A stretch of 64,000 nucleotides of DNA from Lepidodermella squamata (taxonomy: Eukaryota; Animalia; Gastrotricha): contig JBLDXI010000046.1 in the NCBI GenBank assembly GCA_047495785.1, positions 124,001 through 188,000 on the forward strand, read 5' to 3'. The position numbers were made by a program, and so were the translations under genes. This document shows, one piece after another, positions 3,455-29,584 of the stretch (positions within the stretch are counted from its first letter, which is position 1; every line of letters begins with the position of its first letter). A model generated the notes under the pieces. The model saw only the letters and a program-made list of their open reading frames with translations. It had not been told where the DNA came from and did no database searches.

Positions 3455-3650
3455 TTTCAAGCAGTGAATCAAAATAGTCGCTTCCTGTTTTGACCCATGA
3501 GTAATGTTGATATTTTCGCATCGTAATCTCGCTCTCAGCTTATCAGTAGCAACTCATTTGAGGGCAATTTATCTTTTTTTACCCCCCACATTACCTTAGC
3601 ACAGTGCTAATTACTGTCGGGAAAAATACTTCGGCTAGACGCAGTCAATC

Positions 3651-7247: not shown

Positions 7248-8329
7248 TTATTCGACGGACTTGATTATATGAGGAGTTTTTCGGTTCTGGTTCACATAAT
7301 TCCCGATTGACATGTATTTCAGCGAATCATGCCTTTTCCACCAGTTCTGGCCAAAATATTTCCTGAACCCCTTCTCGTGCAGTTTTTCAATCATAGTATT
7401 ACCATACTTCTCAAGCCGGTCCAAGTCATGGTTGAACGCTTCATCGCTTATCATATGCCATTCGACCAATAGATAACCGACGTAGTCGAGAGCTCCATCG
7501 CTTAACGCCCTAGTTAGCGACACCCATTCATCCCCTTCAACGTCCATCTTTACAACAGTTACATAGCTATGGTTGAGCATTTTCATGATTTCAGCCAGTG
7601 AATATGTATCCGGTTTACGATTTCCCTCCTCCTCGCCTGTAATGCCGTAGTGGTGGAATCGGACCCCGTTCGGCCGCACGGCTACGTCATTCATTGTCAT
7701 GTCAAAGGAATGGACGGTGCAACCGCGGAGAGCCATATCGTCGTCGAAGGCATAGTCATAATTCACCCTATAAAAAACTTGGGAATTACAACGAAAAATC
7801 GAGGAATTTAAAAAAAATACCCGAAGGAATAGACAATGCAAGGTTCGTCCTTAGGAAATTGGTCCATGCACACTTGATAAGTTTTGTGAGCTCTAGGCTC
7901 ATCAATTCCCATAGGTTGTAAAAACGAGCATGTGATATCTTCTTTCCTAGTAACTTTTCTGTAAATTTTAGACTATGAAAAATACAGTGGCTGTGATTGC
8001 TTCAAAATTTACCCAACTAGGCTGAAATATCGCTCAAGGTAGAGAGGCGAGTTTGAGAATGGATTAAACTTCCTTGACTCGTCACACGTATCAAAGCTGG
8101 AATATCAAGGAAAAATGAGGAAATTATATGAGTTATCGACATTTTTTGCTTACCATTTCGGATTTGGTGTTGTGGTTGGGGTTGGGGTCTCGATTGGCAC
8201 ATCCTGCTTAACTCTTTGATGGGGCTTGCCCTTGATGATCAGAATGAGAGATATGACTAATATGAAGACAGATCCAACCGCCACTCCCACTGTTTTCGGG
8301 TATATTCTGAACTGGCCTACTATCAACAT
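7248..8329 (-). CDS. METTL24-like (Methyltransf_22/FkbM-related) type II membrane methyltransferase, copy 1, 4 exons
   Basis: N-terminal TM (VGVAVGSVFILVISLILII), stem PKCFDTCD, then VYSFG-VNYDYAFDDDM..GCTVHSFD and KMDVEGDEW; intron positions identical in all four copies. Confidence 0.8.
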
Positions 8330-8457
8330 TTCCGAGTCTTATTTCGCAAGTGTGAGCATGAAAAGACTGCCTTCCTACACCAATCCTCAAATTCATTAAT
8401 TTATAAGGGAATAGGATTAGTTCTGAGATTTATTTTTAAACTTCAAATGCATAGATA

Positions 8458-9659
8458 CTACATCACCAATTCAGGTTTAGGCATTGTTCTATTTAGATTA
8501 GTATAGCCTGCTATAGTCAGGTATAACAATTGATCGAGTCTTCGCCACCAGTTTTCGACGTAAAATTTACGAAATCCTCGCATTTTCAAATTATCGACCA
8601 GTGAATTGCCGTACTTCTCCAATCGCAGCAAATCATGATTGAACGGATTGTCACTAATCGCGTGCCATTCGATCAGCAAATAGCCAACGGTGTCTAAAAC
8701 TTTATCGTCTAAGGCCCGGGTTAACGATACCCATTCATCGCGTTCGATGTCCATTTTCAGGACAGTTATGTAGCTATGATTGAGCATTTTCATTATCTCA
8801 GCCAAGGTTTTCGTGTTAGGCTTCCGATTCGTCTCATCTTCGCCTGTGATTCCCAGGGGCAAGAAGTTCAAATTCGGCTTCAGGGAGGTATTGAATTCAT
8901 CCATCGACATGTCAAAAGAGAAAACCGTGCAATTACGTGCTGCCATTTCGTCGTCAAAAGAGAAGTCGTAATTAATTCTAAAACAAGCGGAAATTATTCA
9001 AATTAACTGTTAATCGCAAGAGTACCCGAATGAGTAAACAATGCAAGCCTCATCCTTGGGGAAATTGTCCACACAAATGTGATAGGTCCTGTGGCCGTGC
9101 AGTTCATTTTCCCCTCGAGGTTCCAGATTTGAGCAGTTCATTTCCGGCGATTCATTTACCACTCTAGTCAACACAGGTAAACATAGGTGAGTTTGATCAA
9201 GGATAAAAGATGAGTGGGGCCAGAATTGGGAGCAATGTGAATCCGATAACCGGTAACAAAACAAAACTTCTCTAAATTTGATTGCAAAGTAGTAAAATCC
9301 CCGCGCGCCGTTGGTTCAAGCGTCTGAATTTTTTAGCAGAACATACTTTACAAGTCGAAAGAAGCGTTCAAGATAAGCGGCCGAGACTGGGGTAGGATTG
9401 ACTCGTCTCGTGAAGTCACAGGTATCGAGGCTATTGAAAAACGGTTATCAGACACGGAGATAAAACAAATGAAAACTGTTACGAACCAATTCGGATCTCT
9501 TCGTGGCTGAAAATCGCTCGCAGTACTTAGTTCGTGTCTAGTTTTAGCAGCGACAATCACCAGCCACGTGATCAGTGTCAAAATCAAGGCAGCGATAACT
9601 AAGATCTTGCATTCACCGGTGTTTGTTTGCGTTGGCGTCAACAACGCATATTTTGTCAT
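8458..9659 (-). CDS. METTL24-like methyltransferase, copy 2, 4 exons
   Basis: TM ILVIAALILTLITWLVIVAA, PNCLDTCD, ICVD..CIVYSFG, NCTVFSFD, KMDIERDEW. Confidence 0.8.
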
Positions 9660-10113
9660 TCACAAAACTGCATTGAATGGCGGGTTTCTAAGCCGCGGCG
9701 TCGCCAAAAATACAAGCGGAGGTTTAAAAACGCGTGGCTGTTAATTCCTTTGTCTTTAATCTCAAACAAAGAAAATTACGCTATTCAATTAACGCCAGCT
9801 ATCATTAAGATGAAAGCTAGAGGCTAGAGCGTTATGCTTTCGTAATAACACATGCTACTTTCCGATGATGCGGCCGTGAGGTATATATGTAATGCCGCAC
9901 AGAATGTCCATTATTCTGGGTTACTGTCGCGATATTTCATGATAATTCGCTTTACGATTGCAGGAAACGGGAAAGACATGTTACCATAAGTCACGTGACC
10001 GCAAATCTCGCCGAGTGCCTTTTGAAACCGTCTGTTTGTTAGCCACCTTGAGTAAAATCCACCAAATTATCGGAAGCCTCACATTTTCACTCGGAACCGG
10101 CTCAGTGAACTTT

Positions 10114-11196
10114 TTATTGTTTCAGCCATTTTCTATTTCGATTAACGTAGCCTGCGATTGTCATATATTGCATCTGATCATGCCGCGCGTACCAGTTTTC
10201 GATGTAGTACTTCCGGTAACCTAACTTCCATAGGCCATCAACCAAACCATTGCCGTATCTCTCCAGCCTATCTGAATTATACTGAAACGGATCACGGCCG
10301 AATAAGTGCCATTCGATGGAGAGGAACCCAACATTTTGCATAACCCCGTCATCCATGGCCTTCCGTAACGAAACCCATTCGTCCTGTTCAACGTCGAGTT
10401 TTAGCACGGTTAAGTAGTTATGGTTTAGCATTTTCATGATTTCAGCTAGGGTTTTGGTGTTGTTTTTGCGATTTGGTTCGTCTTCGCCCGTAATTCCTAG
10501 CTGGAAGAACCGAACGCTGTTATTCCTTATCGGTTCAGAATTCATTGTCATATCGAACGAGAAAACTGAGCAACCACGAGAAGCCATGTCGTCATCGAAT
10601 GTGAAGTCGTAATTTATCCTAAAATTAACCGATTTCAACATTTAAAAGGTCTGGTATTTAATAGCCTACCCAAACGAGTAGACGATACAAGGCTCAGTCT
10701 CCGGGAAGAAATCCATGCAGATGTGATAAGTCTTGTGGCCATTAGTTTCATCCTTCCCAAAGGCTTTTGACATTGAGCAATTTATATCTGGCGGGTCATT
10801 TATCTTCCTGAGAAAGACTTTAGAACTTAGATTATCAGGGTAGGAAACAAGAAACGTACCTAACAAGGTGAAAGAATTTCTCTAGAAATACGAAGGATCC
10901 TGGTATAGGATTGATCCTTATCGATGAATCGCAGGAGTCAAAACTAGGATTAAATTATTTGAAACCTAATTTTACGTACCTAATTATACATACCATGCTG
11001 GGTTCCGTTTGGCTGGCGACATGACGTTTAGCATTTCTATTGGTATTCTGCAGCTTGGTCTAGGCCTCAGCATCATGATGGTAATGATAATTATTATAGA
11101 CAATACTACGATGCCTTTAAATTTCGATTCTAGTTGCTGATAATATGGGACCAGCCGTTGAATCGGGTATTTTACCAATTGTATGTAGTTTGTCAT
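10114..11196 (-). CDS. METTL24-like methyltransferase, copy 3, 4 exons (start could also be 11283)
   Basis: TM GIVVLSIIIIITIMML, PACFDSCD, CIVYSFG, GCSVFSFD, KLDVEQDEW. Confidence 0.8.
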
Positions 11197-11730
11197 CTTA
11201 AGCTTGATAAATAAGCACAGGCAGTTTATTATGAATAACGCAGTTTTTAAGAGCAAACATGTTTGTAATGAGTCGCTTGCCATAGTGGCATCTCAGCCAT
11301 ATGCAAAATATTTAGTACCGGCTGCTTGCGACTACTCAACCCGGTAGCGACGAACACAGGCAATAACTCTGATTAATCGAATTGACAATTGATGGGATTC
11401 ATGTCTTCTGATGAATCATCAATAATTTTTGAGGATTATTGATTTTTGAGGATTTTGATTGGATTTTTGGGGCCTCCCTGCCCTAAATTAGTGGGGCCCC
11501 TCATTGTGGTCGCTACCTTGTGAAAAGCTTTGAGGATCTGCTCCCAGATAAACCACACTTTGATACTTTGTGCGCTATTAGAACAGATTTTGCTCAAAAT
11601 TCTGAGATTCATTTTAACTGAAAGTTTTTGGTAAGTGGGTTCAATATAAGCGGTTTCGGGCACAGTTAAATTAGCAAAAATAGTATTGATTTATTGAATC
11701 GTTCTTCAACATTTCATAAAATTGCGTCGA

Positions 11731-13182
11731 TTAATCAGGGTCTGAGGATTGCCTTCTGCGTTTCCTCCTCAAGTAATTTTCGAATAGATCAAGCTTATTG
11801 TCGATCACATTGCTGAATGTTTCCCGAATTACAGATTTGTACTCCGCATTTGGAGCTGGAAACCTCGGCTTATCGCCTTCGAAAAGGCGAAAATGAGCAA
11901 TAACACCCTCCGTATACGGGTCAAGATGCCGGACCATTCCTCCCTCGATCAACTTATGAATAGAGGCGACAATCACGTTGTCAGATCTCAAAATCATTTT
12001 CTCTCGAGAATGAACCATTGCCACAACATCAACAGTGTAATGGTCTCGAATTGTATGCTTAACCGAGTATGGGCCGATTCTGGCGTCCGTTGAATTCGGA
12101 GTCGGCATGTGAGTCATTGTCCAGAACGCTATTCCTCCGATGAAAGGATCCGCCTTAATAGTAGACTCCAGTAAATCTATCAGGCTCACTCCATTGAAAA
12201 CTTGTAAGAATTCATCGGTATCCATCGAAGCAACCCAGGTTGATTTTTCCCTCAAGAAATAGAAGCATTCGGTCATTGCCGATGTTTGAAAGTGGTGTGG
12301 CGTGAATTGGAGATGAAAATCAAATGGGACTAATGAAAGGATTCCCATCTCGAGATAATACGTCAAATATTCGAAAAAAGCATAAAAATCTGGGTCGTTG
12401 ATGTAGATAACAAAATGTTCGATTCCCAGCATAAGATGGTACTCAATCCACTCCGGGACTCGGTCTAAATGATATTTGTTGAGAGAAGTGCAAGCGGAGA
12501 GTTTGACTTTTCGGTTGAGTCTCACAGGCTCAGGGCAAATCTTTGTATTAACAGCCATTGTCCGGGTTATCTTCCTTGTTCTCGCTACGCTGGATGGTCC
12601 AAAAAGCTTCAACACATTCGGCTTTGCTAGAATGTAAATTCTACTCTTAGAAGTGATCTTAAATGATTTAGTATCGACCGGGCAATGAAGAATCACATTG
12701 GTATGGGAGCTCTCGTATTCCGGTGTTGGTGATTTAGAAACGCAGTGAATGAAATGACCGCTATCGATAACAATGCTCCAATCGTACTTGTAAGCCCACA
12801 GTTCGTATCCAATGAGGTTGTAATGCGAAATTCCATCAACGAGCAGTGGCGTGAGCAAGAGTGTGATTTGCACATACTCTGGTGTCAAATAGGCACCAGT
12901 TAGTAACGGATACTTAAGGGAAGCGATTTCTCTCAGCGTTCGAACTGCATAAAATTCAGCCTGTTGAAGGCACGAACATTCAGCCCCGCGAGATAGATTA
13001 AGGCGGTCGTAATTTCGGCCCAAATATGCGCATTTCGATAAAACGGCGTCAGGAATTTCCAGCGTCGGCAAAGGCTCGCTGTAGTATAGGTGTGGGTTGT
13101 ATCGAACAAAATAAAGTATCACCAGTATCAATTGAGGGCATATTTTCGGTAGTAATCTCACATTTAGGATATTGCGCAACAT
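11731..13182 (-). CDS. Glycosyltransferase family 92 (DUF23, GALT-1-like), intronless, copy 1
   Basis: N-terminal signal anchor; EWIEYHLMLGIEHFVIY, Q-x5-C and WVASMDTDEF (DxD) are GT92 hallmarks. Confidence 0.8.
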   Translation of the reverse strand: MLRNILNVRLLPKICPQLILVILYFVRYNPHLYYSEPLPTLEIPDAVLSKCAYLGRNYDRLNLSRGAECSCLQQAEFYAVRTLREIASLKYPLLTGAYLTPEYVQITLLLTPLLVDGISHYNLIGYELWAYKYDWSIVIDSGHFIHCVSKSPTPEYESSHTNVILHCPVDTKSFKITSKSRIYILAKPNVLKLFGPSSVARTRKITRTMAVNTKICPEPVRLNRKVKLSACTSLNKYHLDRVPEWIEYHLMLGIEHFVIYINDPDFYAFFEYLTYYLEMGILSLVPFDFHLQFTPHHFQTSAMTECFYFLREKSTWVASMDTDEFLQVFNGVSLIDLLESTIKADPFIGGIAFWTMTHMPTPNSTDARIGPYSVKHTIRDHYTVDVVAMVHSREKMILRSDNVIVASIHKLIEGGMVRHLDPYTEGVIAHFRLFEGDKPRFPAPNAEYKSVIRETFSNVIDNKLDLFENYLRRKRRRQSSDPD

Positions 13183-13875: not shown

Positions 13876-14963
13876 TCAGTCATCGTTTCTGTTACTCTTG
13901 ATTCGATTCTGATTGACGTAGCCAGCAATAGTCAAATATTGCAGCTGGTCGTGCCTTCTGTACCAGTTCTCGCCATAGTACTTCCGAAATCCCTTATCGT
14001 GCAACTTCGTGATCAATCCATGCCCATATTTCTCCACCCTGTCGAGAATACCTTTGAACGGATAATTGCTCACAACGTGCCATTCCATAACTAGATGGCT
14101 GACCCGTTCCATGACGCCATCATCAAACGCCCTAGTCAAAGATACCCATTCATCTCTCTCAATGTCGACTTTGAGTACGGTGATGTAGGTATGGTTGAAC
14201 TTTCGCATGATTTCAGCCAACGTTTTTGTGTTCTCCTTACGATTCCCCGAAATTTCACCAGTTAAACCGATTTCATAGAATTTAACGCCACTCGGACGAA
14301 CAGGCTCATCGTGAATGCTCATGTCAAAGGTGAAAACCGAACATCCACGCGCTGCCATTTCGTCGTCAAACGAATATTCCCAATGAGATCTAGTGGAAAC
14401 ATAGATAGATCAATATTTCGGCGAGAAGAAATTAATACCCGAATGAATAGACAATGCATGGTTCATGTTCTGGGAAATTGTCCATACAAACTCGGTAGGT
14501 TTTGTGAGCATTCTCTTCATCTTGCCCAAATGGCTGTAGCTTGCTACATTTGACCTCCTCCGGAGCTCCTACTCTTCTAAAACCAAGGGTTTATTTACTC
14601 AAAGGCGATGTTTTCAACAAAAACTCACTTTACTAGGGCGAAAAAGCGCTCGAGGTAGAAAGTTGCATCTGAATGTGGATTAACATTCGTATGAAAGTCG
14701 CATGTGTCGTAACTAAAGAGAAATCGAAATGGTTCGCGAATATTGCGAGGTCAAAGTCTTTACCAATTAGGAGATCTAGTTGGCGCGGGCGTTTGTTGCG
14801 TTTCGATCGCTTTCTCCGGTTCACATTTCGGGCAACTCGAGCTTAAAATGAAGATTTGAGTGATGAAAATGAGGAAGAGAAGGCCACATATCACAATAGT
14901 ATTTATGTGGCTTAACCGTGTCAATGACACAAAAACGGAAGGAACTAAAATGCTACCTGACAT
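13876..14963 (-). CDS. METTL24-like methyltransferase, copy 4, 4 exons
   Basis: TM IVICGLLFLIFITQIFIL, PNCYDTCD, VYSFG, GCSVFTFD, KVDIERDEW. Confidence 0.8.
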
Positions 14964-15374: not shown

Positions 15375-16465
15375 ATGAAAAAGCAATGGGGCATAGTTTC
15401 ATCCTGGATTTTCACAGGTAAAGACTGTTCACTGACCATTAATTACGAAATAAAGAAAAAATTGTTTTCCAGGTCTAGCAGCTTATTTGCTTTCCCAAAA
15501 TGCAACGGAGAAATTGCTCAAGCCAGGTTTGTAACATTTAATCACCCTGAATCTGTTAAATTCAGCCAAATGTAAATTTAGAAACCGTGGAAGATCCGTT
15601 GAATTTGCCATTTATCATAACTGTAATCTCATCGAGATGCCAATTCGAAAAGCGCCAAGCGATTCGAGAAACATGGGGCGATCGCAGAATGTTAGCTAGA
15701 ATGCTTGGAAATCAAACATACGGGCCTTACTTCATCATCGGACAGCCGGATATTAAGAAATTCAATGATTCAATAGTTGACGAATGTCAAACAAGAATAG
15801 AGAAAGAAGTGACTATCTACGGCGATTTGGTGACTATTTCTGCCCTAGATGTTTACAGCCTGCTAACCCCGAAAGTGTTCGAAACTTTCCTTTGGGCTCG
15901 GCATAAGCTCAGTTTAACCCATTCATCTGGGGATAAACATAGTACTTTCTACTTGGTCAAGACTGATGACGATGCTTACATCAATTTGTTGGCTATAGCT
16001 CGGCAATTCTATCATTCGATGAAGGAACATAGCAAGCGATCCATTTTAGACAAAAACCTCTACTGCGTTGCAAATACTGGAGCTATAGTTGTTCGAGCCA
16101 AAGACTCAAAGTATTATACATCTCGGGAAAGCTACGCCCCCGATTGGTATCCACCGTTTTGCTCCGGGATCGGTTACATTTTCCAAGTTGGCTTGCTAGA
16201 TTTGATGATACCGAAAATCAGGGCGAGAATGGCGAATTATGTACAGAATGAAGATGCGTTCTTCACTGGCATAATAGCTGAGGAGCTGAAGTTGAGGCAC
16301 TTGGATTTCGAGTTCACAGATTCTTGCGGACCGCATGGCTCCGGATGGACGCAGGAGTCGCTTTGCCCAAACGCGAGTCGAAACGCGGTCGTTCACCGTT
16401 TGGAGCCACGCGATATGCGGATGTTGCATAAGTGCCCGGATATGCAACGCTTCTATCGTTATTGA
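15375..16465 (+). CDS. GT31 (Galactosyl_T, beta-1,3-glycosyltransferase) copy 1, 3 exons
   Basis: Two short phase-1 introns give MKKQWGIVSSWIFTGLAAYLL...; RQAIRETWG, KTDDDAY, YPPFCSGIGY, EDAFFTG. Confidence 0.85.
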
Positions 16466-19310: not shown

Positions 19311-20389
19311 ATGCTCGCCCTACCAAACTCAACAGGATGGCGTTACTTCTTATTTTTCGCAGGTATGTCACCAGGCAAATTTCTCAATTTTTTCCAGCTT
19401 CATCTAGACTAAATCTATACAGTTTCCTTAGTAAACGTGAAAGTGCCAAAAATCGCCATTATTCGAGTTTTGGATTCAGGTAATACTGAAATACTCAACT
19501 CAATTTTCGCTGAATTACATAATTTTCAGCAATCGGTGTTCGCTACGATGATGATAATATTGGGGAGATGAAATTTATTATCACTGTCATTTCGAGGCTA
19601 TGCAACTTTGACAAGCGACAAGCTATCAGAGAAACATGGGGGAACCAAACAATGCTGAGATCGAAACTTGGCCCTCATATCTTTGGACCTTTCTTCATCA
19701 TTGGAACTTTTGATTCTAATCAAAGTAACGTGTCTAGTAACCGGGACTGCATGGGTCGATTGAATACTGAAATCGAAACACATCAGGACGTTTTTCAAGT
19801 ATCAGCCTTCGAGAAATATCGCCAACTTACGCTGAAAGTTTTCGAATCTTTCAAATGGGTGCGGCACAACCTTAATTTGACGAATCTCGAAAACTTCTAC
19901 CTAGTGAAAACGGACGATGATATTTATGTTGATTTGGTCGCTGTTTCCCGAGCTCACCATCGATCTATGATGCCTCGTAGCGATAAGGTGGATAGATCCT
20001 TCTACTGCTTCGTCCATTCTGGGGCTCCGGTTATTCGCGATCCTACGTCAAAACACTACGTCTCAAGGGAGAATTATGCCCCTGACTGGTATCCGAAATT
20101 TTGCTCAGGAATCTGTTACATCTTCCAAGTCAGGCTTCTCGATCTCATGATACCAGAAATTAATAGGAATATGAACAATTCAGACCCGAATGAAGACGCT
20201 TTCTTTACAGGAATCATCGCGGAGCGCCTCAAGTTGCGACACAGATCGATAAAAAGCGCAGTTCCCTTTGCTTTCCCGACTGAAGAAGATAAAGTATGTC
20301 AAAAGGGCAGGAACAAATTGCTGGCTCACCCCTTGGGACCCCGTGAAATGCTAACACTTCATAAATGTCGCGAAAATAAAACTTTTTAA
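19311..20389 (+). CDS. GT31 beta-1,3-glycosyltransferase copy 3, 3 exons
   Basis: MLALPNSTGWRYFLFFA-VSLVNVKVPK...-AIGVRYDDDNIGEMKF via two phase-1 introns; KTDDDIY, FCSGICY, EDAFFTG. Confidence 0.8.
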
Positions 20390-20391
20390 TT

Positions 20392-21693
20392 TTATTCTGA
20401 AATTAAAGTGACAGGAGTAGATTTCATTTTGAAGTTGTTTAGTCTCTGGCTTAGAATCGGGTCGAATCTCATCGCAAACGTCTCGTCCTTCTCAGCGATA
20501 GGGGTTAATCCTCCGATCGTTAGCCTATCGAAGAAAATCGTCCTGATTTGATTGTAAGGATCCGCATGATTTTCCCCAAGTTTCAGCTCAGTTTGCGTTA
20601 CGTAAGATACATTAGGAGTTCGAACTATTACGTCGCTGATTTGATAGTCAAACGTTGGATGCTTGTTCCTCCAAGTCCAGTTTAAAACTCGGCTGTAACC
20701 GAGAGTCTTCACTAAATCAGGCCTTGCCGTAGTGTTTAAGCTGGAAAATCGCCATGGGTGCACCATTAAGCCACCGATCAGAGGTTGTGTGACCACCTTT
20801 CGAATTGCCTCCACCATATGTTTCCCGTATGGATCCATGAACCGGTCTGTTGAATGGAATGAAACGTAAACAGCTCGCGGTTTGAATCGGTATAAACAAT
20901 CGTTCATCGCACTGCTATCTAGGAAGTATTGATCAACCGCTCGAAAATTCCACGGAATCAAAGTCACAATTTTCTCATCCAAATATGGCTTTAAAAAGGA
21001 CGAAAGCTCTTTAAAGTCTTCATGAGAGACGTAGATAATGAAATGTTCGAAATCCGTCAATCTGTGATATTCAATCCACTCAGGTATTGTAATAAATTTC
21101 CGCCTATCAGTTACGTAGGAGCAACTCGTTAATGAGAAATTACGAGGCGCGGAATTGAGCTCATTTGAATTAAGGCAGACATTTTCGTAAGTTTGTATAA
21201 TCGAATGTTTCGAAATAGCCCGGATGTCTATTTTTTGCCCGGGGTATAAAACGCGGTTTAAATTCTCCGAGATGTCGAATTTCAGTATCAGGGTGTCTAA
21301 ATGGGTATTTGGCAACTTGCCAACCGCCTTGAAATCGAACCGAATTCCATCAACCGAGCCTCGCCATTTCGAATCCGCCCACCACTTTCGGTAATTCCAG
21401 TAGGTGTATTGCCAGTTTGAAAGTTTCTTCGAAGCGAAAATTGCGTATAAAACAGGATGGCCTTTCCTTGTCGAACGGAATACGCTAAGAAGATACGGCG
21501 CGTTGTTATCTCCATTAGGAGGCGGAAGATCGGCAATTGAGTTCCTGCTACAGCTTGTCATGCCAGTTTTTGATTGATTTCGAAATTCCTTCCTCTCCAG
21601 CCATCGTATTATCGGGGCCCATGTTAGATTAGCAGATATCAGTAACAGCACGCCTGCTACAATTCTAGCACTTAGAATTCGTTTTTGATTCAT
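20392..21693 (-). CDS. GT92-like protein, intronless, divergent DxD (copy 2)
   Basis: Signal anchor; IPEWIEYHRLTDFEHFIIY, VTLIPW, MNDCLYR; the DxD position reads HSTDRF. Confidence 0.75.
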   Translation of the reverse strand: MNQKRILSARIVAGVLLLISANLTWAPIIRWLERKEFRNQSKTGMTSCSRNSIADLPPPNGDNNAPYLLSVFRSTRKGHPVLYAIFASKKLSNWQYTYWNYRKWWADSKWRGSVDGIRFDFKAVGKLPNTHLDTLILKFDISENLNRVLYPGQKIDIRAISKHSIIQTYENVCLNSNELNSAPRNFSLTSCSYVTDRRKFITIPEWIEYHRLTDFEHFIIYVSHEDFKELSSFLKPYLDEKIVTLIPWNFRAVDQYFLDSSAMNDCLYRFKPRAVYVSFHSTDRFMDPYGKHMVEAIRKVVTQPLIGGLMVHPWRFSSLNTTARPDLVKTLGYSRVLNWTWRNKHPTFDYQISDVIVRTPNVSYVTQTELKLGENHADPYNQIRTIFFDRLTIGGLTPIAEKDETFAMRFDPILSQRLNNFKMKSTPVTLISE

Positions 21694-21827
21694 TTTACCT
21701 TCAAAAGCCTAAGTTGATTCCTGCTTCAAGTTACCAAGCCTCCAATTAAAGATTTCTGATTTTGAGAGATGAAGCCAATCCCACAAGGTATGTAGTCTTG
21801 AAATGAGATGTAAAAGTGTCGCTGGAA

Positions 21828-23949
21828 ATGAATTTACGTTTTACGCGGTCATTGATTACCCCGGCAATATACTGTTGCGTCACGTTACGCGGCCTTTTCG
21901 TAGCATTTAGCCCTAAAATCGAGCCAGTGATTCGAGAAATTCCTCTGCCTCCGATAAATTTTGAAAATTTAACAGCTGAATGCAGTTCTTTTTCGTCGAA
22001 ATTTACGTCTTGTACCAAGAAACCACAATGTCTCTACGGCCGAGACGCGTTAAGTCAATTTCCCTTTACAAATGCACCAAAATTTGACCCGAAAAAAGCT
22101 GCAGAGGCGGACGATCAAGAAGCGATAACAGAGCATATTCGATCGATATATTTTTCAAGGATTAGGCAAAAATTATCCTCGCTATCTTGCGGTAATTCGG
22201 CGTGTAGGCCGAAATTTCTGGTCTATACATGTACTGGTGGATGTTGCGGCTGGGGAGATCGGCTACGAGGGATAACAACCATGTTTTACGCCGCGCTTCT
22301 CACAGATTCAATTCTGCTAATCGACGCCAGGTATCCGTTGCCGCTTGATCAATTTTTCGTTATAAATACCGAACTTTACGGAGTTCATAACGATGTTTTG
22401 ATGGCGAAGCAGGAAGAGAACTGTTTGCTGGATCAACCCGACGCATTTCATTACGAGGTGAAGATGAACTCTGACGACAATTTTCGCGGTACAGTCGTCA
22501 GATTTTACCGGGATTATCTGCCTGATACGACTAAGGTTGGCGTCAAAGTTCAGACTAACACAATGGTTGGCGTAGGAGAGCTGTTGGCCCGTCGAGATCT
22601 GTTTGGAGAGCTAGGGAAGATTTATGGATTGCATGAGTACACCAATATACAGCTGGTTTCTGCCGCTGCTCGGATTTTAGTTGGAAAACCACAGCCAAGG
22701 CTGGAAGCTTTCGCTCAACAGGCGTGGCAGCGAATTTTCAATCAGCCGTATAACAAGTCAACCCCAAAAATTGGTAAGGCTAAGGGTTCATTTCTGAATA
22801 AAAAATGGTCACTTAGGACACTTGAGAACATCTATTTGAAAAATCAATTTGTTAATTCGCTATTTCTCCATTCCCACTCCAATAATTCTCGTTTTCTTGT
22901 CTGGAAATCGAATTTTAAAATCTAGAATTTAATTACGAAAGAAATTCCAGTTTGGAAAAATACTAATTGTGAAATCTTCTTAGCGAAAATCAACACCTAG
23001 CCATTTTATTCGGTTATTTAACTTGATATGGTTAGGGTTAGGTTTAGGGGTTACGGTGACAAAACAGCAACTGCGCAGAACAACAAACGCGACAAAACAG
23101 CAACTTTTTCAACTTGCGACAAAACAGCGAAAACTTAGTATGTAAAAGATGCATCGTGTTTCTGCTGTTATGTCGCAAGATGAAAATGTTGCTGTTTTGT
23201 CGCGTTTGCTGTTTTGGCTATTTGCTGTTATGACGGTCTGCGTTATGAGGTTATGAGGTTACGGCGACAAAACAGCAACTGCGCAGAACAGCAAGTTAGG
23301 GTTAGGGTTAGGTTAGGGTGAGTGGCTGGCTCTTAAAACGGGAGATTAGGAACTGGATGGAATAATTTTGGTACTGAATTCAATAGTTTTGTAATGATAT
23401 CACCATATCCTATGATCTCACTATAGGTATGTAAAATTATTCTACCTCAAAATTTTTAAAATCTTCCAAGGTATCCATTTACGAATCGACACATCTTACA
23501 GAGTATGGACAAGCCAACTTCACTGCATAATACCAGAACTTCGCCACATGATTACGAAATACAATTTGCGGAAGCCATTGATCTACATTGCAAATGACAA
23601 CCCTGAAGCCATAAGCAAGCTAATTAAAGCCCTGTGGGTGAACCATCGGATAAAGGCCTACCAACCTATCGACGACGTTCGTCACATCGACGGCATTATG
23701 ACTGATGAGGAGCCGTGGCGAAGCTGGAATACGACGAAGCGTTGGGAAATTGTTGCGGCGACTTATCGCGACTGGTTGTTCCTATCGCGAATGGACTATC
23801 TTATTGTGAGTAGGAGCGGATTTTCAGAATCAGCTGCTTACATGTCTCGCATCCCTACGCGCCGCTTTTTGTACAAGCACCGCGACGAATGCTTATTCGA
23901 TGACTTCAACTCAATTCCAAATTGGGAATTCCCCATCTCAGAAACCTAG
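21828..23949 (+). CDS. Alpha-2/alpha-6 superfamily fucosyltransferase-like protein (GT23/GT37/NodZ-type motifs); exons about 21828-22773 and 23471-23949, 5-prime end uncertain
   Basis: GWGDRLRG; splicing rebuilds motif I IGIHLR; motif II IYIANDN; motif III DWLFLSRMDYLIVSRSGFS. Confidence 0.75.
23030..23319. repeat. Palindromic MITE-like repeat built from GCGACAAAACAGCAA subunits, bracketed by GGTTAG(G) telomere-like hexamers
   Basis: Subunits run forward over about 23055-23135 and inverted over about 23160-23235. A 38-bp direct repeat at 23049 and 23257. A second partial copy lies at about 42325-43062. Confidence 0.7.
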
Positions 23950-24661: not shown

Positions 24662-26044
24662 ATGTTTACAAAAAGGCATTGCTCATTGGCGATAAGCTCT
24701 GCTTTCGTAGCTATCATGGCATTTTGCATGAAATATCCATACCTTGAAAAGCCAATTTGGACACGACGAGTGGAACCGAAATTAGTGAGTGCCTTCGCAA
24801 AATGCGACTCGCTTCACCAGAAATGGGAGATGAGCAATTTAGCGAGGAGCGCGTCATGCTTCTGCCGGCAACGAGCTCACCTTTACGCCAGCAATTCGCT
24901 AATGAAATTGGCAATGAAGGCTCAACCTTTGATTACGTCCATGCTCCATCAAACCGATATTCACGGCAATCACGCTATTTATATCACTTTGTTGCCTAGT
25001 CGGATAACAATCGATGGGACTGATTACGATACAGCTGATCACTACTTGAAATTAGCTTACCGAACGAAATGGCAGGTGACAGCGAGAAGGGCTGAACAAA
25101 TTGACTGCGAGGCAGTTTCTTCGACGCCTGAAACTAACACGAATTACGGGCCCATTATACTCAAATGTCCGATTCTAGGACAACATGTAACAGCAGTAGG
25201 AGACATCAGCATTTACAAGTCTGGCTCAACTTTTCTTTACAGCGGAGTTTTGTGTGAGCAGCCTCTTACTCTGCAGAAACCGACGTTGAATCTAGTGATG
25301 TGCACTATGGTGAATGGGTATCATAAATCGCGAATTCCGGAATGGATCGAGTATCACTTATTAATAGGATTCGAACATTTTACTATCTACGTCAATGACG
25401 CGAATGCTTTGGAATTTTACGAATTTTTGAAGTATTACCTCGTTAAAGGCGTGGTCACTTTGGTGCCCTACGATTTCCACCTTAATTTTACCGAATTTCA
25501 CTTTCAACACGCCCAGATTAACGAATGCTTTCATTTGTGGAAGGGTCGGGCGAAATGGGTTGGTTCGATTGACGTGGACGAGTTTTTCGAGGTCTTCGAC
25601 GGGAATTTCCTCGATACGGTGGAATCTATTTATTCCGAAAATCCTTTAGTTGGTGGAGTTGGATTTAACACCCAATTTCACGGAAGGACGACGAATGCTT
25701 CCGAGTCTTATATTGGAAATCACATGATATCTCACGTGGTTCGCGACTATACATTTTTACTATCCTTTGCCGAGTACTACACGAGGCAAAAGGTGTTGCT
25801 GAGGGCTGATAATGTCGTCTACAGCCTTGTGCATCAAGTACTTGAGGGTGGCGCGGTGAAATACTTGGACTCTTTTACAGAGGGCAGAATTGCGCATTTC
25901 AAAGACTTCTACGACAGGCCTCTCAACCCGCCAGACCACCGTAATCCAAACGTTCCAACGGTTCGCAAGCGCTATGGCGATGTTATCGAACAGAATCTTC
26001 AAAAATTTCTGCACTTTTTGGATCAACAGCTGAGAGCAGCGTAG
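24662..26044 (+). CDS. GT92 glycosyltransferase copy 3, intronless
   Basis: Signal anchor; EWIEYHLLIGFEHFTIY, QHAQINEC, WVGSIDVDEF. Confidence 0.85.
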   Translation: MFTKRHCSLAISSAFVAIMAFCMKYPYLEKPIWTRRVEPKLVSAFAKCDSLHQKWEMSNLARSASCFCRQRAHLYASNSLMKLAMKAQPLITSMLHQTDIHGNHAIYITLLPSRITIDGTDYDTADHYLKLAYRTKWQVTARRAEQIDCEAVSSTPETNTNYGPIILKCPILGQHVTAVGDISIYKSGSTFLYSGVLCEQPLTLQKPTLNLVMCTMVNGYHKSRIPEWIEYHLLIGFEHFTIYVNDANALEFYEFLKYYLVKGVVTLVPYDFHLNFTEFHFQHAQINECFHLWKGRAKWVGSIDVDEFFEVFDGNFLDTVESIYSENPLVGGVGFNTQFHGRTTNASESYIGNHMISHVVRDYTFLLSFAEYYTRQKVLLRADNVVYSLVHQVLEGGAVKYLDSFTEGRIAHFKDFYDRPLNPPDHRNPNVPTVRKRYGDVIEQNLQKFLHFLDQQLRAA

Positions 26045-26580: not shown

Positions 26581-27966
26581 ATGTTCTCAAAAAATCATTT
26601 CGCATTGGCGACAAGCTCTATTTGGGCTATAATCATCATATTTTGCACGAAATATCCGTACCTTGAAAAGCCAATTTGGACGCGACGGTTAGAGCCGAAA
26701 TTAGTTAGCGCCCTTGCAAAATGCGACTTGCTTCGCCAGAAATGGGACATGAACAACTTGACAAAGAGCGCGTCATGTTTCTGCCGACAACGGGCTCAAC
26801 TTTACGCCAGCAATTCGCTAATGAAATTAGCAATGAAGGCTCAACCTTTGATTACGACAATGCTCTATCAAACCGATATTCACGGCAATCACGCTATTTA
26901 TATCACTCTGCTACCCAGTCGAATAACGATTAACGGAACCCATTACGATGCAGCTGATCATTATATCAATTTGGCCTACCTAACGAAATGGCAGGTTACA
27001 ACCAGAAGCGCGGAAAAAATTCGCTGCGAGGCTGTTTCTTCGACGCCTGAAACCAATACGAATTACGGGCCTATAATACTAAAATGCCCGATTTCAGGAC
27101 AAGCTGCTGTAACAACACCACAAGATATTAGAATTTACAAGTCTGACTCTACATTCCTTTACAGTGGAGTTTTGTGTGAACAACCTTTGGTTGTGAAAAA
27201 ACCGACTATGAATCTTACGATGTGTACTATGGTTAATTGGTACCACAAATCCCGAATTCCAGAATGGTTGGAATATCACATGTTGATTGGATTTGAACAT
27301 TTCGCGATCTACGTGAACGATGTAGATTATCTGGATTTTTTCGAGTTTTTGAAATATTACCATGTAAGAGGCGTGGTTACTTTGGTGCCCTATGATTTCC
27401 ACCTTAATTTTACCGAATTTCACTTTCAACACGCCCAGATTAACGAATGTCTTCATTTGTGGAAGGGTCGAGCGAAATGGGTTGGCTCGATAGATTCCGA
27501 TGAGTTTTTCGAGGTTTTCGACGGGAATTTCTTGGACAAAATGGAGTCGGTATACGCCGAAAACCCTTTAATAGGTGCAGTAGGATTTTGGACGCAATTT
27601 CACGCGAGGACTACAAACGCCACGGAGGATCACATCGGGAAACACGTGATTTCTCATGTTGTTCGTGACTATACTTTTTTACAATCCTTCGCAGAGTACT
27701 ACACGCGGCAAAAGGGGCTGCTTAGGCTCGAAAATGTAGTCTACAATCAAATACATCAAACGCTCGAGGGTGGTGTGGTGAAATACTTGGATTCCTTCAC
27801 CGAGGGTCGAATTGCGCATTTCAAAGATTTCTACGATAGGCCTCTCAACCCGCCAGACCACCGTAATCCAAACATTCCAACGGTTCGCATGCGCTTTGGC
27901 GATGTTATCGAACAGAATCTTCAAAAATTTCTGCACTTTTTGGATCAACAGCTAAGAGCAGCGTAG
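26581..27966 (+). CDS. GT92 glycosyltransferase copy 4, tandem duplicate of copy 3
   Basis: Colinear and highly similar to 24662-26044; WVGSIDSDEF; upstream blocks ACAAGGCAATCCT and GCGTCTAGACAA are also duplicated. Confidence 0.85.
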   Translation: MFSKNHFALATSSIWAIIIIFCTKYPYLEKPIWTRRLEPKLVSALAKCDLLRQKWDMNNLTKSASCFCRQRAQLYASNSLMKLAMKAQPLITTMLYQTDIHGNHAIYITLLPSRITINGTHYDAADHYINLAYLTKWQVTTRSAEKIRCEAVSSTPETNTNYGPIILKCPISGQAAVTTPQDIRIYKSDSTFLYSGVLCEQPLVVKKPTMNLTMCTMVNWYHKSRIPEWLEYHMLIGFEHFAIYVNDVDYLDFFEFLKYYHVRGVVTLVPYDFHLNFTEFHFQHAQINECLHLWKGRAKWVGSIDSDEFFEVFDGNFLDKMESVYAENPLIGAVGFWTQFHARTTNATEDHIGKHVISHVVRDYTFLQSFAEYYTRQKGLLRLENVVYNQIHQTLEGGVVKYLDSFTEGRIAHFKDFYDRPLNPPDHRNPNIPTVRMRFGDVIEQNLQKFLHFLDQQLRAA

Positions 27967-28255
27967 CATCCACTTTCTCTGATAAGGTCACTTATTTTGT
28001 ATGGAAAATAAAGATGTTGATGTGTTGCTTTTGCTAGAGCCTTATAAGTTAATGAACCCAGGGTGCAAGTTATGAATCGTCACTTATTTGTAGACCCGAT
28101 GGCGTACTAAATATTGGATCGCTCATAAATTTCGGAAAAGACGAACGCAACTCAACGGCGCAATGCAAGAGGCTTGACCTTTCATTAAGGTGGAAGGATT
28201 AACCGCGTGATTATTAAATTACTGTTACTTTCATACTACGACAGCACGTGTCGCA

Positions 28256-29584
28256 ATGTCACTATCATGCTTGTCCATACTGCTGTCAATTATTTTCGTC
28301 CCATTTTTTATGATTAATTACGCAATTTTCTCAAATCGAAAATACGTAATGCCCAGGATGACCAAACACCTGGATCGCGTTCATTACATGCAAGCATTCA
28401 GAAATGGAGCTATGGACTGTAAAACAATGGAAATTATTCGAATATCCCACAAATATGATTACGACGATGACAAGTATCGCGAAATTCGCGACTCGATTAA
28501 ACCTGGATTCGATAAATCTTTGATTTGCGATAATTGCTTCAAACTCCCCGACGTAGACAAATACGGCTGGCCTCAACGGTGCGATGAAAGCGTCGAAATT
28601 TTCGTAGCTATCAAGTCTCCACCTCAAAATTTCAAGCAGCGATATGCGATCAGAAATTCTTGGTTGTTAAACCATTTGATAACCAGTCCGAAAAACCGAA
28701 TTCGCCACGCATTTTTCGTAGGCCTGCCGCCAGAAATTCGCGGGGAAAAGTCGAATTTTGCGCGACTTATTCGGCTGAAGCAATTTTGTGAATTATACAA
28801 CAGTTGCCGCTACAACGAGCCGGAATTTGCGGGGAAGACCAACATCAGCTCTGTCCATATGAAAAATTACTACGCCGCTGAGAGAAGTCGCGAAAATTAC
28901 GACAAATTCATCAAATCAACAGCTTATTACCGAAATTTGCCGTCGAAAAAGCTGTTTGATCTAATGTTGGGAGAAGCCGTCTCGAAAAACGACATGGTTT
29001 TGAATGAAAATTATGATGATTTTCCTGGGGATGCTCTGAATAAAAGTCTGTCATCTATGCTTTGGTCGCGGAAATTCTGCGGAAATTCGAGATTTGTTGT
29101 TCTCATGGATGACAATGTATTTCTGTTCCCCGATCGTTTGCGGTTGCTGTTGGATCGATTTTCAAATGAAAAGTTATTCATGGCTGGGAATAGAGTCAGC
29201 GGTGTCATTGACCATTTTTCCAAGCCATTTTACGTTATGGGGTCGGATGCTGTTGATTCATTACTTAGCGTCATTCCCAACCTTAATTTCGAGCTTTTAT
29301 CGAAGAATTCGACTGAAAATGTGATAATCACAGGATTTGCAAGGTCATTAGCTGGAATAGAAGATCGACACATTTGCCATTTTTCTGTTGGATCTCATGC
29401 ATGGCGGACAGTTCAGTACCATGAAATCGAGCCATGGGTTGTAGCAACATTGTCAAATCCAAAAAATTCGCTGTTCATCTCTCGGTCTATTTACAACCCG
29501 CATAGCCCGAAAAATGACCGGAGGAATCTGGAGCGAGCCCTTGCGACTAACTTGAGCCTTCCATTTTACCCTGAAATTCCTTAA
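28256..29584 (+). CDS. Divergent GT31-like protein, intronless (copy 4)
   Basis: Signal anchor; VAIKSPPQNFKQRYAIRNSW, FFVG, WSRKFC; KxDDD replaced by LMDDN and ED by EN; long insertion after FFVG. Confidence 0.75.
   Translation: MSLSCLSILLSIIFVPFFMINYAIFSNRKYVMPRMTKHLDRVHYMQAFRNGAMDCKTMEIIRISHKYDYDDDKYREIRDSIKPGFDKSLICDNCFKLPDVDKYGWPQRCDESVEIFVAIKSPPQNFKQRYAIRNSWLLNHLITSPKNRIRHAFFVGLPPEIRGEKSNFARLIRLKQFCELYNSCRYNEPEFAGKTNISSVHMKNYYAAERSRENYDKFIKSTAYYRNLPSKKLFDLMLGEAVSKNDMVLNENYDDFPGDALNKSLSSMLWSRKFCGNSRFVVLMDDNVFLFPDRLRLLLDRFSNEKLFMAGNRVSGVIDHFSKPFYVMGSDAVDSLLSVIPNLNFELLSKNSTENVIITGFARSLAGIEDRHICHFSVGSHAWRTVQYHEIEPWVVATLSNPKNSLFISRSIYNPHSPKNDRRNLERALATNLSLPFYPEIP

What the first reader, a model, noticed from the sequence alone, without database searches (positions are those of the whole stretch)
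7248..29584. Candidate animal gene cluster for a methylated, fucosylated galactan-type glycan
Seen: 13 consecutive intact genes in 22 kb all encode predicted Golgi-type enzymes from four unrelated families, interleaved rather than in separate arrays (MT, MT, MT, GT92, MT, GT31, GT31, GT31, GT92, FucT, GT92, GT92, GT31). Lectin genes flank the block and a GT7 lies 14 kb further on. Known: GT92 members are beta-1,4-galactosyltransferases (C. elegans GALT-1 adds Gal to core fucose; plant GALS makes galactan), GT31 adds beta-1,3 sugars, and O-methylated Gal/Fuc/Man occur in mollusc, planarian and nematode glycans, where the methyltransferases are largely unidentified. Inference: tandem duplication alone does not explain unrelated families sitting together, so this may be a co-regulated pathway cluster that builds and methyl-caps one mucus, cuticle or egg-coat glycan.
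Basis: partly seen in the sequence, partly recalled or inferred. Interest (0 to 1): 0.85.

Follow-up and report, generated by a model that had tools for sequence, protein, structure and literature searches.

The report
Mixed sugar-enzyme gene cluster in an animal
Thirteen neighbouring genes in a small invertebrate genome (probably a gastrotrich) all encode Golgi-type sugar-adding or methyl-adding enzymes from four unrelated families, a real and old cluster that resembles the uncharacterised "glycoclusters" of C. elegans and offers four testable candidates for the still-unknown animal enzymes that methylate glycans.

Summary
Positions 7248-29584 carry 13 consecutive genes: four GT92, four GT31, four METTL24/FkbM-like methyltransferases (MTs) and one weakly supported fucosyltransferase-like gene. 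Two C-type lectin genes follow, and a GT7 gene lies 14 kb further on.

- **Gene models:** each MT gene has four exons and encodes a 304-338 aa type II membrane protein. RNA contigs confirm four of the introns and show that MT1, MT2, MT3 and GT92a are transcribed.
- **Age and constraint:** all paralogues are old (dS saturated), except GT92c/d (dS 0.69, dN/dS 0.15).
- **Caveats:** the FucT call rests on sub-threshold evidence. The 5' exons of GT31a-c were not found. GT92b and GT31d have degenerate DxD motifs.

- **For a glycan role:** a homologous MT domain is fused to GT11, GT10 and GT32 domains in one metagenomic ORF. C. elegans "glycoclusters" already published combine GT92, GT31, GT11 and methyltransferases. 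Planarians make methylated, polygalactosylated core fucose.
- **Against, or untested:** MT homologues in four other phyla have no GT neighbours within 10 kb. No shared promoter motif was found. The product glycan is unknown.

The scan noted the same family set on another piece of this genome (s1-393984). That may be the other haplotype.

The parts
7248..8329 (-). MT1: METTL24/Methyltransf_22-like methyltransferase. Four exons, 305 aa, N-terminal membrane anchor.
   Evidence: Pfam on the last exon. Exon homology among paralogues. Spliced ORF without stops. RNA joint 7766/7820.
8458..9659 (-). MT2: as MT1, 304 aa. Introns 8978-9025, 9164-9346 and 9431-9486.
   Evidence: All three introns are seen as GT..AG joints in RNA contigs of run X2, which also gives MT2 the highest depth. 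Spliced ORF is intact.
10114..11283 (-). MT3: as MT1, about 338 aa. The start codon is inferred.
   Evidence: Low RNA depth.
11731..13182 (-). GT92a: single-exon type II glycosyltransferase, 483 aa, DxD = DTD.
   Evidence: Pfam PF01697, E 7.8e-20. Alignment. RNA contigs cover it.
13876..14963 (-). MT4: as MT1, about 311 aa.
15560..16465 (+). GT31a: catalytic exon with DDD and EDAFFTG motifs. The 5' exon(s) were not found.
   Evidence: Pfam PF01762, E 2.7e-23..
17872..18747 (+). GT31b: catalytic exon. The 5' exon(s) were not found.
   Evidence: Pfam E 1.8e-32. Matches human B3GALT5 (8zwp) at E 4e-19.
19523..20389 (+). GT31c: catalytic exon. The 5' exon(s) were not found.
   Evidence: Pfam E 2.3e-26.
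20392..21693 (-). GT92b: single exon, 433 aa, membrane anchor. DxD is replaced by STD and the C-terminal His is missing.
   Evidence: Pfam E 8.9e-15. Alignment A2.
21828..23949 (+). Fucosyltransferase-superfamily-like gene. About two exons. The long intron (about 22780-23478) holds a 75-nt inverted repeat.
   Evidence: XG_FTase E 0.0064, below cut-off. Atlas feature hits to XG_FTase, O-FucT, FUT8 and GT11 at 0.89-0.91. GxGD, HxR and C-terminal motifs read by eye. Repeats.
24662..26044 (+). GT92c: single exon, 460 aa, DxD = DVD.
   Evidence: Pfam E 1.7e-23..
26581..27966 (+). GT92d: tandem duplicate of GT92c (82% aa identity, dS 0.69, dN/dS 0.15).
28256..29584 (+). GT31d: divergent single-exon GT31-like gene, 442 aa, membrane anchor, DDN in place of DxD.
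   Evidence: Pfam partial match, E 1.3e-9. No PDB relative.
29919..30395 (+). Secreted C-type lectin 1.
   Evidence: Pfam Lectin_C, E 1.3e-16.
31558..32100 (+). Secreted C-type lectin 2 (70% identical to lectin 1 over the domain).
43761..44669 (+). GT7 (beta4GalT-like) gene, at least two exons. A Cys-loop receptor gene and MULE transposase ORFs separate it from the block.
   Evidence: Pfam Glyco_transf_7N E 6.5e-44 and 7C E 1.3e-10. Intervening genes.
60..4355 (+). Three paralogous secreted genes (60-743, 1484-2140, 3651-4355) with a weak ConA/LamG_3-like match.
   Evidence: Pfam E 0.002-0.07, below cut-off. Paralogy 32-65%.

Best explanation
This is a genuine, old and transcribed 'glycogene cluster' in a compact spiralian genome, probably the gastrotrich Lepidodermella squamata.

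Four unrelated families of Golgi-type type II membrane enzymes each expanded by local duplication and have been kept side by side:
- GT92, putative beta1,4-galactosyltransferases;
- GT31, beta1,3-hexosyltransferases;
- METTL24/FkbM-type SAM methyltransferases with a luminal catalytic domain;
- one fucosyltransferase-like GT-B enzyme.

Most likely mechanism (inferred): the enzymes act in the same Golgi compartment on the same class of secreted or surface glycans. They would extend fucose- and galactose-containing chains, for example Gal-beta1,4-Fuc and oligo-galactose as in planarian N-glycans. The methyltransferases would then O-methylate terminal sugars using luminal SAM.

Shown: the family assignments (except FucT), membrane anchors, splicing, transcription of four genes, long-term purifying selection, and animal ancestry of the MT genes.

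Inferred: donor and acceptor specificities, a shared pathway, and co-regulation.
For: - **Families:** Pfam assignments. GT92 profile matches the solved galactan synthase 8d3t with the DxD aligned. GT31b matches B3GALT5 and B3GNT2.
- **MT gene models:** 304-338 aa with an N-terminal hydrophobic anchor, the CxVYSFG-I..D.SFDD SAM motif and all six family-invariant residues.
- **Transcription:** run X2 is RNA. It shows GT..AG joints and zero depth in intergenic bins, and it covers MT1, MT2, MT3 and GT92a.
- **Constraint:** dS is saturated for nearly all paralogue pairs although the ORFs are intact. GT92c/d has dN/dS 0.15.
- **MT family:** relatives are metazoan METTL24-like proteins. The intron after VYSFG is shared with Lingula and Ptychodera.
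- **Domain fusion:** P0057 is one uninterrupted ORF with GT32 + GT11 + Methyltransf_22 + GT10 + Methyltransf_22. The ORF beside it has GT10 + Methyltransf_21 + MGAT2-like domains, and a LicD gene and a nucleotide-sugar transporter gene lie nearby.
- **Literature:** C. elegans glycoclusters combine GT92, GT31, GT11, methyltransferases and DUFs, with hints of co-expression (PMC7614267). Planarians carry methylated polygalactosylated core fucose and GALT-1 homologues (PMC5936828). The animal fucose methyltransferase is still unidentified.
- **Scan notes:** GT92 is flagged only in this cluster and its counterpart.
Against: - MT homologues have no GT neighbours within +-10 kb in Solemya, Macrostomum, Lingula or Ptychodera.
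- No over-represented shared motif was found upstream of the genes.
- The FucT call is sub-threshold. It has no PDB or sequence relatives, and the structure prediction failed.
- GT92b and GT31d have degenerate metal-binding motifs.
- N-terminal exons of GT31a-c were not found.
- The same genome carries many other GT clusters (18 notes), which suggests a general tendency to cluster rather than one dedicated pathway.
- Vertebrates have METTL24 but are not known to make O-methylated glycans (my own knowledge).
- RNA evidence comes from contigs of one whole-animal sample, so it does not show co-regulation.
Confidence: 0.5

Rival explanations
1. The block is a duplication hot-spot without a shared pathway. 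It would be a fast-evolving region where several expanded Golgi-enzyme families happened to seed and then amplify locally. The enzymes would work on different glycans, in different cells or at different stages, so adjacency carries no functional meaning.
For: - The genome has many other mixed or single-family GT clusters.
- Each family here is a local paralogue group.
- No shared promoter motif was found.
- MT homologues in four other phyla have no GT neighbours.
- Two members have degenerate catalytic motifs.
Against: - Four unrelated families are interleaved over 13 consecutive genes with nothing else between them.
- dS is saturated, so the arrangement has persisted for a long time.
- The same family combination recurs in C. 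elegans clusters.
- The same combination recurs as a domain fusion in P0057.
- The scan's notes flag GT92 nowhere else in the genome.
Confidence: 0.33
2. The methyltransferases do not act on glycans. They would methylate another luminal substrate (protein, lipid or small molecule), and their position next to the glycosyltransferases would be incidental.
For: - METTL24 has no assigned substrate in the literature I could search.
- The fold search gives only generic class I SAM-methyltransferase matches, such as RNA 2'-O-methyltransferases and sugar C-methyltransferases, at TM about 0.3.
- Vertebrates keep METTL24 without known methylated glycans (my own knowledge).
Against: - A homologous domain is fused with GT11, GT10 and GT32 in one ORF, and a Methyltransf_21 domain is fused with GT10 and MGAT2-like domains in the neighbouring ORF.
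- The topology is type II and luminal.
- One MT gene lies on the far side of GT92a from the other three.
- There is precedent for GT-methyltransferase fusions with proven sugar O-methylation in PBCV-1 A064R (PMC9614988).
Confidence: 0.12
3. The cluster is a horizontally acquired glycosylation island, for example from a giant virus, protist or bacterium, taken up as a block.
For: - The GT92 genes and GT31d are intronless.
- A comparable GT and MT gene neighbourhood exists on an intron-free metagenomic contig.
- Three word-based searches found no close relatives.
Against: - The MT genes have three spliceosomal introns each. One is at a position shared with brachiopod and hemichordate homologues.
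- The best MT relatives are animals.
- GT31b is close to animal B3GALT5.
- GC content is flat across the window.
- No relatives of P0057 were found in viral contigs.
Confidence: 0.03

Closest known systems
C. elegans 'glycoclusters' (C13A2/F07G11, K06H6/ZK488, T09E11/T15D6/E03H4; Paschinger et al. 2023, PMC7614267)
   Same: Runs of consecutive genes for putative Golgi type II enzymes of different CAZy families, including GT92 galt-1 homologues, GT31, GT11 fucosyltransferase homologues and methyltransferases. Several members of the same family occur per cluster. Function is unknown and co-expression is only suggested.
   Different: A different phylum (probably Gastrotricha, not Nematoda). Here the methyltransferases are METTL24/Methyltransf_22-type; I could not check the family of the worm ones. 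No nucleotide-sugar transporter, sulfotransferase or DUF268/273/1647 genes lie in this block. Lectin genes flank it.
GT92 beta1,4-galactosyltransferases (C. elegans GALT-1, plant GALS1-3, poplar GalS1 structure 8d3t)
   Same: Pfam GT92 domain, type II topology, and a DxD (D-x-D-E-F/Y) that aligns with GalS1 in GT92a, c and d.
   Different: Only 25-35% identity among the window's own lineages. No activity is known. GT92b lacks the DxD and the C-terminal His.
METTL24 / Pfam Methyltransf_22 (PF13383), FkbM-like class I SAM methyltransferases
   Same: The profile of the four genes retrieves PF13383 proteins. The invariant D, D, E, E, E, H residues and the VYSFG motif are conserved. An intron position is shared with other animal members. 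The proteins enter the secretory pathway through a signal anchor.
   Different: A fourfold tandem expansion embedded among glycosyltransferases. No member of the family has a proven substrate.
Chlorovirus PBCV-1 A064R (two rhamnosyltransferase domains plus a 2-O-methyltransferase domain; PMC9614988)
   Same: A proven case of glycosyltransferase and sugar O-methyltransferase acting consecutively and linked genetically. It is analogous to the P0057 fusion found here.
   Different: A viral cytoplasmic enzyme with a different methyltransferase family. It is a fusion, not a gene cluster.
Planarian methylated, polygalactosylated core-fucose N-glycans (Schmidtea mediterranea; PMC5936828)
   Same: A known glycan that would need exactly this enzyme set (a GALT-1-like GT92, further galactosyltransferases, a fucosyltransferase and O-methyltransferases), in a phylum considered close to gastrotrichs.
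   Different: No glycan data exist for this animal, and no gene cluster was reported for the planarian.

Membership tests
CAZy GT92 (Pfam PF01697) | Significant match to the GT92 domain model above the curated cut-off | tested here: met
   All four ORFs score 55-84 bits against a cut-off of 23. The profile of the four hits the only solved GT92, 8d3t, at E 3.8e-4.
CAZy GT92 (Pfam PF01697) | DxD metal-binding motif of a GT-A enzyme | tested here: met
   GT92a has DTD, GT92c DVD and GT92d DSD, aligned with DVD of GalS1. GT92b does not meet it (STD), so that copy may be inactive or atypical.
CAZy GT92 (Pfam PF01697) | beta1,4-galactosyl transfer from UDP-Gal | not testable with these tools
   Requires an enzyme assay.
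CAZy GT31 (Pfam PF01762 Galactosyl_T) | Significant match to the domain model above cut-off | tested here: met
   83, 113, 93 and 39 bits against a cut-off of 23. GT31b matches B3GALT5 at E 4e-19.
CAZy GT31 (Pfam PF01762 Galactosyl_T) | DxD (DDD) and ED-aromatic-x-G motifs | tested here: met
   GT31a-c have KTDDDAY and NEDAF(F/Y)TG (translations, alignment). GT31d does not meet it (MDDNVF).
CAZy GT31 (Pfam PF01762 Galactosyl_T) | Type II membrane anchor (complete gene) | tested here: inconclusive
   GT31d has an N-terminal hydrophobic segment. For GT31a-c, no upstream exon with an anchor could be assigned.
METTL24-like / Methyltransf_22 (PF13383) | Match to the family model | tested here: inconclusive
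   The last exons alone score 17.8-21.9 bits against a cut-off of 22.4, and MT1's last exon matched only Methyltransf_21. Spliced proteins could not be submitted. Indirect support is strong: a profile of the four exons retrieves 1713 proteins, and all 19 I scanned are PF13383 at E 1e-13 to 1e-53.
METTL24-like / Methyltransf_22 (PF13383) | SAM-binding motif and family-invariant acidic and His residues | tested here: met
   CxVYSFG / (I)NYDFSFDD is present. The six invariant columns (D, D, E, E, E, H) of a 64-sequence alignment include the four window genes.
METTL24-like / Methyltransf_22 (PF13383) | Common descent with animal members (shared gene structure) | tested here: met
   The intron directly after VYSFG is shared with Lingula and Ptychodera genes.
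Glycan O-methyltransferase (functional class) | Methyl transfer from SAM to a sugar hydroxyl of a glycan | not testable with these tools
   Only context supports it: luminal topology, GT neighbours, and the P0057 fusion with GT11, GT10 and GT32.
GT-B fucosyltransferase superfamily (GT11/GT23/GT37/GT65/GT68) | Significant match to a fucosyltransferase model or structure | tested here: not met
   XG_FTase scores 15.6 bits against a cut-off of 23.4. AtFUT1 in the PDB matches at E 0.67. The C-terminal exon has no hits. There is no similarity to the GT11 domain of P0057.
GT-B fucosyltransferase superfamily (GT11/GT23/GT37/GT65/GT68) | The three shared motifs (N-terminal GxG[ND], HxR, and a C-terminal hydrophobic-S-x-S-x-F motif) | tested here: inconclusive
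   GWGDRLRG, GIHLRID and DYLIVSRSGFSESAAY are present by eye. The motif definitions come from my memory, not from a tool. The Atlas feature search places both exons nearest FucT families at 0.89-0.91. The AF2 model was unusable (pLDDT 32).
Biosynthetic gene cluster (pathway cluster of non-homologous enzymes) | Three or more unrelated enzyme families contiguous | tested here: met
   Four families lie in 13 consecutive genes.
Biosynthetic gene cluster (pathway cluster of non-homologous enzymes) | Co-expression or co-regulation of members | tested here: inconclusive
   MT1, MT2, MT3 and GT92a are present in one RNA data set. No shared upstream motif was found.
Biosynthetic gene cluster (pathway cluster of non-homologous enzymes) | Clustering conserved in other species | tested here: not met
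   No GT genes lie within +-10 kb of MT homologues in four other phyla. An analogous but not demonstrably orthologous cluster exists in C. elegans.
Biosynthetic gene cluster (pathway cluster of non-homologous enzymes) | Members act on one product | not testable with these tools
   Needs glycomics and enzymology.

The most novel reading that the evidence does not exclude
The four clustered METTL24-like genes are the long-sought animal Golgi glycan O-methyltransferases. Together with the neighbouring GT92, GT31 and FucT-like enzymes they would build methyl-capped oligo-galactosyl-fucose epitopes of the planarian type. Under this reading, the recurrence of the same family set in nematode glycoclusters and in a single fused ORF elsewhere reflects a widespread, modular 'galactose-fucose-methyl' glycan toolkit.
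Probability: 0.3. Interest if true: 0.8.

Novelty: new member of a known kind. Interest (0 to 1): 0.55.

Why it matters
O-methylated glycans of nematodes, molluscs and flatworms are targets of fungal and animal innate-immune lectins. The animal methyltransferases that make them have not been identified; PMC7614267 says so explicitly.

This locus names a specific family (METTL24/Methyltransf_22) as a candidate. The family has type II topology, glycosyltransferase neighbours, and a natural fusion to fucosyltransferase domains. That makes the question directly testable with recombinant enzymes.

The locus also extends mixed-family 'glycogene clusters' from C. elegans to a second, distant animal phylum. 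If the clustering proves functional, it bears on whether animals have pathway-type gene clusters at all.

Tried and rejected
- **Word-based homologue searches:** searches with GT92c, MT1 and the FucT-like ORF all came back blank. The lineage is not represented closely, so microsynteny through close relatives was impossible.
- **FucT-like gene:** AF2 on the first ORF without an alignment gave pLDDT 32 and was not used. PDB sequence searches with either exon gave nothing significant. BLASTP against the GT11 domain of P0057 gave nothing.
- **MT fold:** a good model of a homologue (pLDDT 89) gave only generic class I methyltransferase matches at TM about 0.3, so it says nothing about substrate.
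- **Shared promoter motifs:** k-mer enrichment over 12 upstream regions, and two candidate motifs, were no better than shuffles.
- **Spliced leader:** a 30-nt loose end at 7955 looked like a spliced leader. It is the spliced exon 3-exon 4 sequence on the other strand of a palindromic contig.
- **MT-homologue neighbourhoods:** three long metagenome contigs were uninformative because of prokaryote-style gene calls.
- **Viral origin of P0057:** no relatives were found in viral contigs.
- **HGT origin of the cluster:** rejected on intron and phylogenetic-affinity grounds.

Full report
**Observation**

- GT92 (PF01697): 11731-13182(-), 20392-21693(-), 24662-26044(+) and 26581-27966(+).
- GT31 (PF01762): 15587-16465, 18007-18747, 19568-20389 and 28256-29584, all (+).
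- Four paralogous minus-strand ORFs at 7248-7841, 8458-8946, 10114-10641 and 13876-14358. They score just below threshold for Methyltransf_21/22.
- The ORFs 21816-22925 and 23548-23949 form the 'FucT'.

Two C-type lectin genes follow at 29919-30395 and 31558-32100. The GT7 gene lies at 43761-44669 (Glyco_transf_7N, E 6.5e-44). A Cys-loop receptor gene and MULE/SWIM transposase ORFs separate it from the block. The left flank holds three paralogous secreted genes with only a weak ConA/LamG_3-like match. Nothing else of size fits between the 13 genes, except a 1.4-kb gap at 16466-17871 that holds a repeat.

**Gene models and expression**

Comparing the regions upstream of the four methyltransferase (MT) ORFs shows three further conserved exons in each gene. 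The first exon encodes a hydrophobic anchor.

I laid two public runs on 7248-13200. Run X2 is RNA. Its contigs skip 8978-9025, 9164-9346, 9431-9486 and the MT1 intron at about 7767-7820, with GT..AG ends on the minus strand. Its depth is zero in the intergenic bins. It covers MT1 and MT2 well, and MT3 and GT92a weakly.

The spliced MT2 ORF is 304 aa with no stop. MT1, MT3 and MT4 give 305, about 338 and about 311 aa, with three introns of 49-57 nt at the same positions. All four carry an N-terminal anchor followed by the C-x-VYSFG / (I)NYDFSFDD motif.

The four GT92 genes and GT31d are single-exon genes with N-terminal anchors. For GT31a-c only the catalytic exon is defined. I could not assign upstream exons.

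The FucT-like gene has an N-terminal anchor. Its intron is about 700 nt long and contains a 75-nt inverted repeat flanked by direct repeats.

**Age and constraint**

| Paralogue group | Amino-acid identity |
|---|---|
| MT1-4 | 57-62% |
| GT31a-c | 48-50% |
| GT92a vs c/d | 34% |
| GT92b vs the other GT92 | 25-30% |
| GT92c vs GT92d | 82% |

Synonymous sites are saturated for nearly all pairs, yet the ORFs are intact. GT92c/d has dS 0.69 and dN/dS 0.15. The array is therefore old and under purifying selection, not a recent burst.

Two members look catalytically atypical. GT92b has STD in place of DxD and lacks the conserved C-terminal His. GT31d has DDN.

**What the families are**

- **GT92.** The profile of the four genes hits the only solved GT92, poplar galactan synthase 8d3t, with the DxD aligned.
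- **GT31.** GT31b matches human B3GALT5 at E 4e-19 and B3GNT2 at E 6e-15.
- **MT.** A profile of the four last exons, searched against 1.84 billion representative proteins, finds 1713 relatives.
  - The best named relatives are METTL24-like proteins of molluscs, a brachiopod, a nemertean, a flatworm, a hemichordate and a cnidarian, plus chytrid and charophyte proteins.
  - All those I scanned are Pfam Methyltransf_22.
  - In a 64-sequence alignment, the six invariant columns include the window genes.
  - The intron immediately after VYSFG is shared with Lingula and Ptychodera genes. This argues for vertical descent in animals.
  - A confident model of a homologue (pLDDT 89) matches only generic class I SAM methyltransferases.
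- **FucT-like.** The assignment stays weak.
  - XG_FTase scores E 0.006, below cut-off, and AtFUT1 matches at E 0.67.
  - Atlas feature hits are all within fucosyltransferase families, at 0.89-0.91.
  - Three motifs that I recognise from memory are present.
  - No significant sequence or structure match was obtained.

**Is it a pathway?**

Direct tests available here were limited. The window's lineage has no close relatives in the protein collections: three searches came back blank.

Evidence against, or neutral:
- MT homologues in Solemya, Macrostomum, Lingula and Ptychodera have no glycosyltransferase neighbours within 10 kb.
- No upstream motif is shared beyond chance.

Evidence that favours a link between this MT family and glycan synthesis:
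1. **A natural fusion.** One relative, P0057, is a single uninterrupted 1795-aa ORF on a metagenomic scaffold.
   - Its domains are GT32, GT11, Methyltransf_22, GT10 and a second Methyltransf_22.
   - The ORF upstream carries GT10, Methyltransf_21 and MGAT2-like domains.
   - LicD and nucleotide-sugar transporter genes lie nearby.
   - Fusions of a glycosyltransferase with a sugar O-methyltransferase are experimentally proven in chlorovirus A064R (PMC9614988).
2. **C. elegans glycoclusters.** Paschinger et al. 2023 describe C. elegans 'glycoclusters' of consecutive putative Golgi enzymes that include GT92 galt-1 homologues, GT31, GT11 fucosyltransferase homologues and methyltransferases. Some have similar temporal expression. 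The authors state that the fucose methyltransferase is unidentified (PMC7614267).
3. **A matching glycan exists.** Planarian N-glycans carry mono- to penta-galactosylated core fucose that is selectively O-methylated, and planarians have GALT-1 homologues (PMC5936828). That structure would need exactly this enzyme set.

**Organism and genome context**

The published assembly has 122 Mb, 157 contigs and 43% GC (PMC11660948). This fits the window's 42% GC and the scan's 148 pieces. I did not test the identification further.

The scan holds 18 notes on glycosyltransferase clusters in this genome. Only one other note mentions GT92: s1-393984, which describes the same family set on another piece.
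- Its length (30.7 kb) is close to the MT1-to-GT7 span here (about 37.4 kb) minus roughly 7 kb, about what the MULE ORFs occupy.
- Run X1 has contigs 90-99% alike at full depth.
- I therefore suspect that piece is the other haplotype and not an independent cluster. I could not check this.

**Verdict**

The cluster is non-random, old and expressed. A glycan role for the MTs has new independent support. A single co-regulated pathway making a methylated fucosylated galactan remains an inference; I put it at about 0.3-0.5.

The phenomenon is already described, though unexplained, in C. elegans. I file this as a new member of a known kind, of moderate interest. Its main value is that it yields concrete, testable candidates for animal glycan O-methyltransferases.

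Noticed in passing
L005:7271-12658 (also L006:22-5409); L005:3-4982: A metagenomic scaffold carries one 1795-aa ORF with GT32, GT11, Methyltransf_22, GT10 and Methyltransf_22 domains. The ORF beside it has GT10, Methyltransf_21 and MGAT2-like domains. LicD and nucleotide-sugar transporter genes lie nearby. The origin is unknown (an intron-poor eukaryote or a giant virus), and no relatives were found in viral contigs.
   Followed up: partly
window 35252-41204 (-): ORFs with SWIM zinc finger and MULE transposase domains, probably a Mutator-like element. They lie between the glycoenzyme block and the GT7 gene, next to a Cys-loop receptor gene (32969-34643, -).
   Followed up: no
window 16790-17340: A Pro/Arg- (or Gly/Arg-) rich low-complexity stretch with a 69-75-nt tandem repeat (16913-17112) lies in the 1.4-kb gap between GT31a and GT31b. 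It is unclear whether it is coding.
   Followed up: no
window 23040-23294: A 75-nt inverted repeat (23060-23134 / 23158-23232, 84% complementary), flanked by 47-nt direct repeats, lies inside the long intron of the FucT-like gene. It looks like a MITE.
   Followed up: no
window 20389-20392 and 21693-21828: GT31c and GT92b converge, with their stop codons 2 nt apart. GT92b and the FucT-like gene diverge, with about 130 nt between their start codons, so they may share a bidirectional promoter. MT2 ends only about 130 nt before the MT1 start codon (possibly an operon-like pair).
   Followed up: no
window 7248-13200 (run X1): DNA contigs of run X1 include many pieces only 90-99% identical to the window, at depth equal to or above the identical pieces. 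This suggests a diverged second haplotype or a duplicate of the cluster. It fits scan note s1-393984, which places the same family set on another piece.
   Followed up: partly
L003:11951-13273; L004:14586-15197; window MT genes: The intron placed directly after the VYSFG SAM-binding motif is conserved between the window's MT genes, a brachiopod METTL24-like gene and a hemichordate one. It is therefore an ancient bilaterian intron.
   Followed up: yes
P0008, P0134, P0149, P0083 (hemichordate and mollusc proteins): Many 500-600 aa Methyltransf_22 proteins carry an N-terminal region of about 300 aa with no Pfam match. In Ptychodera P0008 this region is a second, degenerate MT-like half.
   Followed up: partly
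window 60869-62942 (+): F5/8 type C-like and fibrinogen-C domain ORFs (a fibrinogen-related lectin-type gene) lie at the right end of the window. The window is therefore rich in putative carbohydrate-binding proteins.
   Followed up: no
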